The translations under genes were made by a program, and so were the position numbers. A model generated the notes under the pieces. It was given only the letters and a program-made list of their open reading frames with translations, did not search any database and was not told where the DNA came from. Shown here piece after piece: positions 29,092-29,335 of a stretch of 39,133 nt of DNA (within the stretch, counting starts at the first letter, position 1; the number at the start of each line of letters is the position of its first letter). The DNA is from Octopus bimaculoides (taxonomy: Eukaryota): the NCBI RefSeq assembly GCF_001194135.2, contig NC_068993.1, forward strand, positions 49,064,442 to 49,103,574. The letters are read 5' to 3'.

Positions 29092-29335
29092 CCAAGGGAT
29101 GCCTTTTGCATCGAAGGTCGGCGATTGTCGTACGCTGAAGAAGGGAAATAACCCTGAAACTCGAGTACGTACGTATCGTAGATCAAGATGGGAAGGATAA
29201 CTTCCCTTGGCAAATACAGACAGGACACAGAAGTGTGTCGATAGCCAGCTGGAGGAGATGTCCTCCTGGGGCTAAAAGCAACAATAACATCCACCCCTCG
29301 GGGTCAGCCACATTTAAGTGGCAAATATACTTCAC
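29086..29335 (+). mobile_element. Hammerhead-bearing structured cassette, probably a Penelope-like element pseudo-LTR or a retrozyme unit, truncated by a gap
   Basis: Contains the hammerhead, a 14-bp enclosing helix and several further hairpins; bounded by (TA)n and an N gap. The class is inferred from the known association of such hammerheads with PLEs and retrozymes. Confidence 0.55.
29122..29178 (+). ncRNA. Minimal type I hammerhead ribozyme
   Basis: Helix I: CGUACG 29129-34 with CGUACG 29168-73, plus CGAU 29122-25 with AUCG 29175-78. Core CUGAAGA 29135-41. Helix II: AGGG-aaauaa-CCCU 29142-55. GAAA 29156-59. Helix III: palindrome ACUCGAGU 29159-66. Cleavage triplet GUA, with the cut after 29167. 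Confidence 0.88.

What the first reader, a model, noticed from the sequence alone, without database searches (positions are those of the whole stretch)
29122..29178. Intact minimal type I hammerhead ribozyme with palindromic helix III (dimer-activated type)
Seen: every core nucleotide is present and correctly spaced: CUGAAGA, helix II AGGG/CCCU with a 6-nt loop, GAAA, and the A15.1-U16.1 pair. The cleavage triplet is GUA, and helix I has 6 bp (CGUACG/CGUACG) plus a 4-bp extension. As a monomer helix III is only 2 bp, but ACUCGAGU is a perfect palindrome, so two copies can form an 8-bp shared helix. Established: this is the architecture of double hammerheads in newt satellite 2 and of minimal hammerheads in Penelope-like elements. 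Inference: it self-cleaves after position 29167 when transcribed as a tandem or dimer. The 10.1-11.1 pair is A-U rather than the commoner G-C, which may lower activity.
Basis: partly seen in the sequence, partly recalled or inferred. Interest (0 to 1): 0.9.

Follow-up and report, generated by a model that had tools for sequence, protein, structure and literature searches.

The report
Lone animal-type hammerhead ribozyme copy
This is a complete, correctly spaced copy of the self-cutting "hammerhead" RNA motif that rides on small mobile elements in many animal genomes. It is a solitary copy at the tip of an unusually long hairpin, a new example of a well-known kind and not a new mechanism.

Summary
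Window 29122-29178 (+) holds a type I hammerhead ribozyme (HHR) with every core nucleotide present: helix I 6 bp plus a 4-bp closing stem, helix II 4 bp with a 6-nt loop, helix III 2 bp inside the palindrome ACUCGAGU, and cleavage after A29167.

It is unlikely to be chance. A strict descriptor expects 0.0035 hits per window. A covariance model built from independent natural HHRs scores it 39.8 bits, against 13.1 for the next match.

Rfam does not report it. Rfam also misses obviously real HHR families that I fetched as controls.

Folding supports dimer activation. The monomer misfolds (-16.1 against -11.0 kcal/mol for the active fold). Two copies fold into a double hammerhead (ddG -6.3).

"Minimal" is a misnomer, because the element lengths and loop motifs are those of the canonical animal HHR.

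There is no second copy in 39 kb and no reverse transcriptase or endonuclease within about 6 kb. It lies between (TA)n tracts and is followed by a 270-N gap.

Best reading: a lone copy of a retrozyme / Penelope-like non-autonomous element. Activity and family size are untested.

The parts
29122..29134 (+). Helix I, 5' strand: closing stem CGAU (29122-25), internal-loop nucleotides UGU (29126-28), CGUACG = positions 2.6-2.1 (29129-34).
   Evidence: Read. Pairs checked. U29128 is a pyrimidine immediately before 2.6, as the extrahelical IL1.C8 is in the Schistosoma hammerhead (PMC2632901).
29135..29141 (+). Catalytic core, first box: C3 U4 G5 A6 A7 G8 A9.
   Evidence: Aligned to the core of covariance model R1 without gaps.
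29142..29155 (+). Helix II AGGG/CCCU (A10.1-U11.1 at its base) with hexaloop AAAUAA (29146-51).
   Evidence: The loop fits the RN4A loop-2 motif of natural hammerheads (PMC2632901). The A-U pair stands where G-C is usual (PMC4209133).
29156..29167 (+). G12 A13 A14, then helix III A15.1-U16.1 and C15.2-G16.2 around UCGA (together the palindrome ACUCGAGU, 29159-66), then A17. The predicted cleavage is between 29167 and 29168.
   Evidence: The self-duplex of the palindrome is -12.7 kcal/mol. The intermolecular 8-bp helix III appears in the dimer MFE. The identical GAAACUCGAGUA half occurs in many natural hammerheads from metagenome contigs.
29168..29178 (+). Helix I, 3' strand: CGUACG = positions 1.1-1.6 (29168-73), U29174 (the 5' U of internal loop 1), closing stem AUCG (29175-78).
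   Evidence: U in this position is the partner of the 3' A of loop 2 in solved hammerheads (PMC2632901).
29086..29216 (+). 131-nt hairpin that extends helix I. The outer arms are 29086-29121 and 29179-29216. The base is a perfect 14-bp stem, UAUUUGCCAAGGGA / UCCCUUGGCAAAUA.
   Evidence: MFE -55.9 kcal/mol, z = -6.7, 0 of 200 shuffles as stable. 37 flank-to-flank pairs, against 0-33 in 22 fetched copies with the same 3' half. The hairpin in the hammerhead register is -50.3 kcal/mol. The minus strand folds 12 kcal/mol worse. The outer stem has 4 G-U pairs and no A-C mismatch.
29217..29335 (+). Unique sequence continuing from the hairpin up to the assembly gap. It has three small hairpins and a third copy of TGGCAAATA (29319-27). 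It probably belongs to the same element, whose right end is lost in the gap.
   Evidence: Fold of 29086-29335: -97.4 kcal/mol, z = -6.9. The 9-mer occurs three times in the window, all within 29086-29327. No similarity elsewhere in the window.
29060..29088 (.). (TA)14.5 microsatellite abutting the left end of the hairpin. Its counterpart is (TA)10 at 29606-29625, just after the 270-N gap (29336-29605). This is a possible insertion target.
   Evidence: Tandem Repeats Finder. Gap map. (TA)n is a preferred target of several Penelope-like clades (PMC8557442).

Best explanation
29122-29178 is a genuine hammerhead ribozyme sequence of the canonical animal type I kind. This is the same kind found in newt satellite 2, in Schistosoma Sm-alpha and in metazoan non-LTR retrozymes.

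It sits here as a single copy of a small non-coding mobile element of the retrozyme / Penelope-like (pLTR-derived, non-autonomous) type, landed in a (TA)n tract.

Mechanism, inferred from the family:
- In a transcript with two or more copies, or between two transcripts, the palindromic ACUCGAGU segments pair into one 8-bp helix III. Two catalytic cores then form.
- Each core cuts its own strand after A17 (29167), leaving a 2',3'-cyclic phosphate and a 5'-OH.
- In the parent element this trims multimeric RNA to unit length for circularisation and reverse transcription.

At this locus the lone copy is predicted to sit mostly in an inactive, register-shifted fold, so it is probably a poorly active or inactive relic. 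The exception would be a partner copy lying in the adjacent gap.

Shown here: the motif, its improbability by chance, the architecture and the folding energetics. Inferred: cleavage, the element family and the mode of spread.
For: - All core nucleotides and all three helices are present in register.
- The strict descriptor expects 0.0035 hits per window.
- Covariance model R1, built from 10 independent natural type I hammerheads, gives 39.8 bits and E about 1e-10 over all 45 positions, with no indel and no non-standard pair. The next match scores 13.1 bits.
- Element lengths 6/7/4/6/4/3/8/1/6 are identical to the Rfam RF00163 consensus printed.
- They also match the 'canonical' metazoan architecture described in PMC4209133.
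- The loop nucleotides of the conserved tertiary-contact motif are present: loop 2 fits RN4A, internal loop 1 has its 5' U, and a pyrimidine precedes 2.6 (PMC2632901).
- The same 3' half, including A17, is found in dozens of natural copies that form families, some in tandem (L012, 662 nt apart) or inverted pairs. One copy, L085, also shares CUGAAGAAGGG...CCC.
- GUA is a natural cleavage triplet (PMC1636495).
- The monomer active fold is -11.0 against an MFE of -16.1 kcal/mol. The dimer MFE is the double hammerhead, ddG -6.3.
- Strand asymmetry of the hairpin favours the ribozyme strand by 12 kcal/mol.
- (TA)n lies on both sides, and PLE clades prefer (TA)n (PMC8557442).
- Monomeric retrozyme copies dispersed in genomes are described (bioRxiv 10.64898/2026.07.22.740005).
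Against: - Only one copy is available, so there is no covariation test and no proof that a family exists in this genome.
- Rfam reports no hammerhead at gathering score, nor at E up to 10.
- Three positions depart from the commonest state: A7, A10.1-U11.1 and A17.
- No reverse transcriptase or GIY-YIG domain was found within 22.5-35.3 kb, and there is no tandem partner.
- The very long helix I is not typical of the fetched comparator copies.
- Translated searches for other copies found nothing. These are uninformative, because no ORF of this window is on record in that collection.
- Model R1 is partly circular. Nine of its ten training sequences were fetched with a pattern containing the query's own GAAACUCGAGU.
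Confidence: 0.55

Rival explanations
1. The 125-131-nt hairpin is a miniature inverted-repeat DNA transposon of the Tc1/mariner type: terminal inverted repeats TTTGCCAAGGGA / TCCCTTGGCAAA, inserted at a TA. The palindrome is then a DNA-level feature. The hammerhead at its centre is a passenger, real or fortuitous, and not the reason for the structure.
For: - The inverted ends are a perfect 12-14 bp, with TA on both outer sides.
- Arms pair along their whole length, as in short palindromic MITEs (established knowledge, from memory: MADE1-like elements).
- A mariner transposase remnant is present in the window (Pfam PF01359, E 3.6e-13, at 5506-5838).
- TGGCAAATA occurs three times within 245 bp.
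Against: - The left flank is a (TA)n run, so a TA 'duplication' there is uninformative.
- No other copy of the ends exists in 39 kb.
- The ends do not resemble the mariner ends I recall (memory only).
- The outer stem has 4 G-U pairs against 0 A-C mismatches, and the + strand folds 12 kcal/mol better. This leans towards RNA-level constraint on the ribozyme strand (p about 0.06, so weak).
- A random 33-nt hairpin tip forming a complete in-register hammerhead is very improbable (my estimate is about 1e-7 to 1e-8 per hairpin).
Confidence: 0.15
2. Chance look-alike. In a repeat-rich genome of gigabase size, a sequence satisfying the hammerhead descriptor arises now and then without ever having been a ribozyme.
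For: - The core words alone are not significant (0.61 expected per window).
- The strict descriptor rate of 0.0035 per 34 kb would give hundreds of hits in a gigabase genome.
- Rfam gives no hit.
- 10.1-11.1 is A-U, and the copy is single.
Against: The extra, independent features multiply the improbability:
- palindromic loop 3 (1/16)
- closing stem of helix I
- the three loop nucleotides of the tertiary motif (about 0.02)
- a further 28 bp of stem (z = -6.7)
- element lengths identical to RF00163
- sharing of both halves with a natural copy, L085

Rfam also misses clearly real families, so its silence is weak evidence.
Confidence: 0.12
3. A domesticated single-copy hammerhead acting in a host transcript (intron or UTR), like the amniote HH9/HH10 or rodent Clec2 ribozymes. 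It would cut or regulate an mRNA rather than serve a mobile element.
For: - It is a solitary copy.
- It has a very stable extended helix I that would hold the two products together.
- Isolated type I hammerheads with host roles are known (PMC7229834, discussion; PMC6155905).
Against: - No gene-like ORF or Pfam domain lies within 22.5-35.3 kb.
- The surroundings are microsatellites, SINE copies and gaps.
- A dimer-dependent helix III is a poor design for a single-copy cis-acting ribozyme.
Confidence: 0.05

Closest known systems
Canonical metazoan type I hammerheads of non-LTR retrozymes and satellite-like repeats: newt satellite 2, axolotl HHR_Amex2, coral and mussel retrozymes, Schistosoma Sm-alpha (Rfam RF00163).
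   Same: - Type I topology.
- Helix I 6 bp followed by an internal loop and a closing stem.
- Helix II 4 bp with a 6-nt purine-rich loop ending in A.
- Helix III 2 bp capped by a palindromic tetraloop ('similar to invertebrate HHRs', PMC7229834).
- Predicted dependence on a second copy.
- AT-rich, non-coding setting.
- Element lengths equal to the RF00163 consensus.
   Different: - No tandem array or second copy in the assembled sequence.
- Helix I continues into a hairpin of about 40 bp.
- A-U at 10.1-11.1, A7 and A17 together push it below any Rfam report.
- Transcription, cleavage and circular RNA are all untested here.
Minimal hammerheads in the pseudo-LTRs of Penelope-like elements (Cervera and de la Pena 2014; Lunse, Weinberg and Breaker 2016).
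   Same: - Type I.
- Palindromic 15.2-16.2 / loop 3 region.
- Dimer-dependent.
- Associated with retroelements that like (TA)n targets.
- Many copies are solitary remnants of truncated elements.
   Different: - The PLE minimal form has helix II of 6-8 bp, helix I of 4-5 bp, an unpaired nucleotide after A9, usually no helix III and no tertiary-contact loops (PMC4209133). This one has none of those traits.
- No RT / GIY-YIG ORF lies nearby.
Natural hammerheads fetched here from metagenome contigs: L012 and L002 (Rfam-positive), family A (L065, L068, L080, L092), family B (L022, L025, L034 and others), and L085.
   Same: - Identical GAAACUCGAGU half, by construction of the search.
- A17 in L002, family B and L085.
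- L085 also has CUGAAGAAGGG...CCC.
- L002 also has a long extended helix I (33 flank pairs).
   Different: - Different helix I and helix II sequences and different flanks.
- Most have weak or no extension of helix I.
- Several occur as tandem or inverted pairs on one contig.

Membership tests
Hammerhead ribozyme (any type) | Conserved core C3 U4 G5 A6 N7 G8 A9 ... G12 A13 A14, A15.1-U16.1 pair, H17 (not G) at the cleavage site. | tested here: met
   Read directly: CUGAAGA, GAA, A29159-U29166, A29167. Aligned without gaps to model R1.
Hammerhead ribozyme (any type) | Three helices I, II and III radiating from the core, in register. | tested here: met
   Helix I 6+4 bp, helix II 4 bp, helix III 2 bp. 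Helix III is marginal as a monomer (+0.9 kcal/mol) but 8 bp in the dimer.
Hammerhead ribozyme (any type) | Site-specific self-cleavage in Mg2+, abolished by core mutations. | not testable with these tools
   Needs in vitro transcription and cleavage assays.
Hammerhead ribozyme (any type) | G10.1-C11.1 pair at the base of helix II (highly conserved, not absolute). | tested here: not met
   A29142-U29155. Natural exceptions were seen here: U-U in family B and A/C or a bulged A in L085. A U-U mismatch at this position is reported in axolotl HHR_Amex2 (PMC7229834).
Rfam RF00163 Hammerhead_1 | Score at or above the curated gathering threshold (34 bits). | tested here: not met
   No hit at gathering or at E up to 10 on 700 nt and 91 nt. 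Control: the same tool finds L012 and L002 at 34-35 bits but misses or barely sees families A and B. The model is narrow.
Canonical metazoan type I hammerhead (retrozyme / satellite type) | Open helix I. Helix I 6 bp, helix II 4 bp, helix III 1-2 bp capped by a short palindromic loop (PMC4209133). | tested here: met
   6 bp / 4 bp / 2 bp plus UCGA. Same lengths as the RF00163 consensus.
Canonical metazoan type I hammerhead (retrozyme / satellite type) | Loop 1 / loop 2 nucleotides for tertiary contact: loop 2 RNnA with a 3' A, a 5' U of loop 1, and a pyrimidine at the 3' end of loop 1 (PMC2632901). | tested here: met
   AAAUAA (A29146...A29151), U29174, U29128. Whether they actually dock is not testable here.
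Metazoan non-LTR retrozyme | Head-to-tail repeats of about 150-450 bp, each with a hammerhead (dimers to multimers). Monomeric derivatives also exist. | tested here: inconclusive
   No second copy in the window. A 270-N gap starts 168 nt downstream. Monomer copies are reported for such families (bioRxiv 10.64898/2026.07.22.740005).
Metazoan non-LTR retrozyme | Expression as linear and circular RNA of unit length. | not testable with these tools
   Needs RNA data or Northern blots.
Penelope-like element (autonomous) | ORF with reverse transcriptase and GIY-YIG endonuclease between pseudo-LTRs that carry the hammerhead. | tested here: not met
   No Pfam family at E up to 1 in the stop-free stretches (at least 45 aa, low-complexity ones left out) of the six frames starting within 22.5-35.3 kb. 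No long ORF other than low-complexity ones.
PLE 'minimal' hammerhead | Helix II 6-8 bp, helix I 4-5 bp, unpaired nucleotide between A9 and 10.1, no helix III (PMC4209133). | tested here: not met
   Helix II 4 bp, helix I 6 bp, no extra nucleotide needed, helix III present.
Tc1/mariner-type MITE | Terminal inverted repeats, TA target-site duplication, many dispersed copies. | tested here: inconclusive
   Inverted ends of 12-14 bp and TA on both sides. But the left flank is (TA)n, and no other copy is available.

The most novel reading that the evidence does not exclude
The 131-nt hairpin is itself the functional unit: a very small hairpin-shaped mobile or regulatory RNA/DNA element with 12-14 bp inverted ends at TA sites. 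It carries a dimer-activated hammerhead at its tip, so two hairpins 'kiss' through the palindromic helix III to cut each other. This would be a hammerhead vehicle distinct from tandem retrozymes, Penelope-like pLTRs and Sm-alpha SINEs.
Probability: 0.1. Interest if true: 0.6.

Novelty: new member of a known kind. Interest (0 to 1): 0.3.

Why it matters
Hammerheads of this architecture are known from many animals and are tied to retrozymes and Penelope-like elements, so the locus adds an example and not a principle.

Three points have some value.

(1) It shows how far a complete, canonical-length hammerhead can drift (A7, A10.1-U11.1, A17) and drop out of Rfam. The same model also misses whole natural families. 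Rfam-based counts of animal hammerheads are therefore underestimates.

(2) The very long, strand-asymmetric extension of helix I is unusual among the comparators. It would keep the cleavage products annealed, which favours religation or circularisation. If it is general for the family, it says something about how such RNAs are held together.

(3) If the source genome is, as the repeats suggest to me from memory, that of a cephalopod or another mollusc, hammerhead-bearing elements there are barely described. A text search for hammerhead ribozyme plus octopus found nothing specific.

Tried and rejected
- Rfam at gathering score and at E up to 10 found no hammerhead. I did not take this as disqualifying after the control.
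- Other copies in the window: a 33-mer with 3 mismatches, BLASTN with word size 7 and a covariance model found none.
- Other copies through translated ORFs in the 5.8-billion-protein collection, all six frames: none. This is uninformative, because three ORFs of this window are not on record there at all.
- A specific pattern keeping loop 2 and helix III found nothing in metagenome or viral contigs.
About half are real hammerhead families and the rest are random bacterial matches.
- A Pfam scan of six-frame stretches starting within 22.5-35.3 kb, looking for RT / GIY-YIG, found nothing.
- Supplementary files of two key papers were searched for the sequence. One held no match and the other has no supplementary file held as text. 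Lunse et al. 2016 is not held.
- I considered that the hairpin is the head of the neighbouring SINE in reverse, and rejected it: the SINE copy at 34040-34200 shows a different head sequence.
- I considered that the loose descriptor hit at 18466-18554 is a second hammerhead, and rejected it: 3-bp helix II, 4-bp helix I, long loops in helices II and III, and at the chance rate.
- Organism identification was not pursued with the last protein search. It would not change the verdict.

Full report
**What is there.**
The window is a draft eukaryotic scaffold: 18 runs of N, many microsatellites, SINE copies, a mariner remnant and no convincing gene.

At 29122-29178 on the + strand the sequence reads CGAU-UGU-CGUACG / CUGAAGA / AGGG-AAAUAA-CCCU / GAA / AC-UCGA-GU / A / CGUACG-U-AUCG. 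In standard hammerhead numbering:
- C3 to A9 = 29135-41
- A10.1-U11.1 = 29142 / 29155
- G12 A13 A14 = 29156-58
- A15.1-U16.1 = 29159 / 29166
- C15.2-G16.2 = 29160 / 29165
- A17 = 29167
- the scissile bond lies between 29167 and 29168

**More than chance?**
The core words alone are not significant: CTGANGA...GAAA...GT is expected 0.61 times per window.

With the helices required, my descriptor finds this site only. It expects 0.0035 strict hits, or 0.03 loose hits, per shuffled window. At that rate a gigabase genome would still give hundreds of accidental hits, so the features outside the descriptor matter:
- the inner four bases of helix III complete a perfect 8-nt palindrome
- helix I resumes for 4 bp after a 3x1 internal loop
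- the loops carry the nucleotides that Dufour et al. found conserved for the loop 1 / loop 2 contact: loop 2 of the form R-N4-A (AAAUAA), a U as first nucleotide of loop 1 (U29174), and a pyrimidine at the 3' end of loop 1 (U29128, placed like IL1.C8 of Schistosoma) (PMC2632901)
- the stem continues for a further 28 bp or so (below)

I judge a pure accident unlikely (about 0.1).

**Rfam, and a control for it.**
Rfam reports no hammerhead here, at gathering score or at E up to 10 on 700 or 91 bases.

To see what that means I fetched natural relatives. Screening them shows random bacterial matches plus several obvious hammerhead families on AT-rich contigs, many from a few sample series.
- Some copies are in tandem (L012, two copies 662 nt apart).
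- Some are in inverted pairs (L036, L043, L107).

Rfam finds only L012 and L002, at 34-35 bits against a threshold of 34. It gives family A (L068, L092) a 19.6-bit HH9 match and does not see family B at all. The model is narrow, and its silence on the window is weak evidence.

The printed RF00163 consensus has exactly the element lengths of the window motif: 6/7/4/6/4/3/8/1/6 = 45.

A covariance model built from ten independent sequences (nine fetched copies plus the RF00163 consensus; alignment A1, model R1) scores 29129-29173 at 39.8 bits. E is about 1e-10, the match is full length, and there is no indel and no non-standard pair. The next match in the window scores 13.1 bits. This is partly circular, since nine of the ten training sequences were fetched with the query's own 3' half. 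The helices, the lengths and the first core box are not circular.

**Which kind of hammerhead.**
Cervera and de la Pena define two forms (PMC4209133).
- The 'canonical' metazoan type I motif has helix I of 6 bp, helix II of 4 bp and helix III of 1-2 bp capped by a 2-4 nt palindromic loop.
- The 'minimal' hammerhead of Penelope-like elements has a longer helix II, a shorter helix I, an extra nucleotide after A9 and no helix III.

The window motif is the canonical one, not the minimal one. The 2-bp-plus-tetraloop helix III is described as the invertebrate form in PMC7229834.

It departs from the commonest state at three tolerated positions:
- A7.
- A17. GUA is a natural triplet (PMC1636495) and is seen in L002, family B and L085.
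- A-U at 10.1-11.1, where G-C is 'highly conserved' (PMC4209133).

Natural copies fetched here also deviate at 10.1-11.1: U-U in family B, and an unpaired or mismatched A in L085. L085 shares CUGAAGAAGGG...CCC-GAAACUCGAGUA with the window.

**Folding and the dimer idea.**
- As a 57-nt monomer the catalytic fold is worth -11.0 kcal/mol, and helix III contributes +0.9.
- The minimum-energy fold (-16.1) uses a shifted helix I register, made possible by GUACGUACGUA, and pairs U4-G5-A6 with loop 3.
- Two copies have as their minimum-energy structure the double hammerhead. Both helices I and II are in the catalytic register and there is an 8-bp intermolecular ACUCGAGU helix.
- The dimer is 6.3 kcal/mol better than two misfolded monomers, for both the 57-nt and the 131-nt versions.

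It is a prediction. No cleavage has been measured.

Helix I runs on. 29086-29216 is one hairpin of 131 nt with the hammerhead at its tip.
- MFE -55.9 kcal/mol, z = -6.7.
- -50.3 kcal/mol in the hammerhead register.
- The base is a perfect 14-bp stem, UAUUUGCCAAGGGA / UCCCUUGGCAAAUA.

Among 22 fetched copies carrying the same 3' half (from 21 contigs), folded the same way, flank-to-flank pairing is 0-20 pairs, except L002 with 33. The window has 37.

The minus strand folds 12 kcal/mol worse. The outer stem has four G-U pairs and no A-C mismatch. This leans towards constraint on the RNA of the ribozyme strand, but only at p about 0.06.

The hairpin starts exactly where a (TA)14.5 tract ends (29060-29088). 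119 nt of unique, structured sequence follow it, then a 270-N gap. Directly after the gap comes (TA)10.

The 9-mer TGGCAAATA occurs three times in the 39 kb, all within 29086-29327. I cannot explain the third copy.

**What it is not next to.**
- No second hammerhead and no other copy of the flanks in the window.
- No Pfam domain, hence no RT or GIY-YIG, in the stop-free six-frame stretches starting within 22.5-35.3 kb.
- No tRNA gene.

So it is not inside a recognisable Penelope-like element and not in an assembled tandem array.

**Best explanation.**
It is a real hammerhead of the canonical animal kind, present as a lone copy of a small non-coding element of the retrozyme / Penelope-related kind.
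- Such elements are non-autonomous and AT-rich, with units of 150-450 bp (PMC7229834).
- They are related to PLE pseudo-LTRs and leave many dispersed monomers (bioRxiv 10.64898/2026.07.22.740005).
- Several PLE clades insert preferentially into (TA)n (PMC8557442), which fits the flanks.

In the parent element the ribozyme would cut multimeric transcripts as a double hammerhead. Here, alone, it is predicted to be largely inactive, unless the gap hides a partner.

Confidence is about 0.55 for the whole statement and about 0.85 that the motif descends from a true hammerhead.

**Rivals.**
- A Tc1/mariner-type MITE (inverted ends, TA flanks, mariner remnant in the window): 0.15.
- A chance look-alike: 0.12.
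- A domesticated host ribozyme: 0.05.

**Novelty.**
It is a new member of a known kind. It is of modest interest, mainly for the long helix I and as an example of a complete hammerhead that Rfam does not catch.

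Noticed in passing
window 33898-34024 (+): A 5S rRNA match above Rfam's gathering score (50.7 bits against 38, E 7.6e-08), with several non-standard pairs and an insertion. It lies about 40 nt upstream of a SINE copy (34066 onward). It could be a 5S pseudogene or part of a composite repeat.
   Followed up: partly
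window 20989, 29042 (-), 29626, 30710, 34066: Five copies of one SINE-like repeat (GAAGYTTGCTTYCCARCC...GGTTCCGGGTTCAGTCC, with a box-B-like segment). Two of them face each other across the hammerhead element, each with (TA)n at its 5' end. From memory it resembles a cephalopod SINE. I did not test this.
   Followed up: partly
window 5506-5838 (+) and 30861-31031 (+): Mariner-type transposase remnants. The first matches Pfam Transposase_1 PF01359 (E 3.6e-13). The second (…LLHPPYSHDLAPAAFHLL…) looks like the C-terminal part of such a transposase but gave no Pfam hit.
   Followed up: partly
window 29086-29094 (-), 29208-29216 (+), 29319-29327 (+): The 9-mer TGGCAAATA occurs only three times in the 39 kb, all inside the 245 bp around the hammerhead (0.46 expected for the whole window). 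The first two are the hairpin base. The third is unexplained: a possible alternative right end of the element.
   Followed up: partly
L012, L002, L065, L068, L080, L092, L022, L025, L034, L074, L018 and others (metagenome contigs): Several natural type I hammerhead families on AT-rich contigs, many from a few sample series (Ga0126336/38/43, OFE*), probably host animal DNA. Rfam 15 recognises only L012 and L002, and misses the families with a 5-bp helix II or a U-U at the base of helix II.
   Followed up: partly
L085 (JAAUXW010047222.1), minus strand of the locus, about 270-300: A single hammerhead-like motif, CUGAAGAAGGGGUCAAACCCGAAACUCGAGUA, with a 4+8 bp helix I. It shares A7 and the A-GGG...CCC helix II with the window motif. 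It is the only candidate close relative found.
   Followed up: partly
window 31080-31370 (-) and about 7200-7425: A second, longer SINE-like repeat with a tRNA-like end (GTGGAGGCGCAATAGCCCAGTGGTTAGGGC... on the minus strand). ARAGORN calls no tRNA gene in the window.
   Followed up: no
window 23700, 25740, 26260 (-), 32700: Another dispersed short repeat, visible as the recurring translated motif (A/S)FHP(F/L)(T/W/G)(V/I)(D/V) in stop-free stretches.
   Followed up: no
window 11000-17000: A long stretch with strongly negative GC skew (down to -0.76) and low-complexity, C-rich and homopolymer-like sequence on the + strand.
   Followed up: no
window 18466-18554 (+): A loose hit of my hammerhead descriptor (3-bp helix II, 4-bp helix I, long loops in helices II and III). 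It is at the chance rate and is not regarded as a ribozyme.
   Followed up: yes
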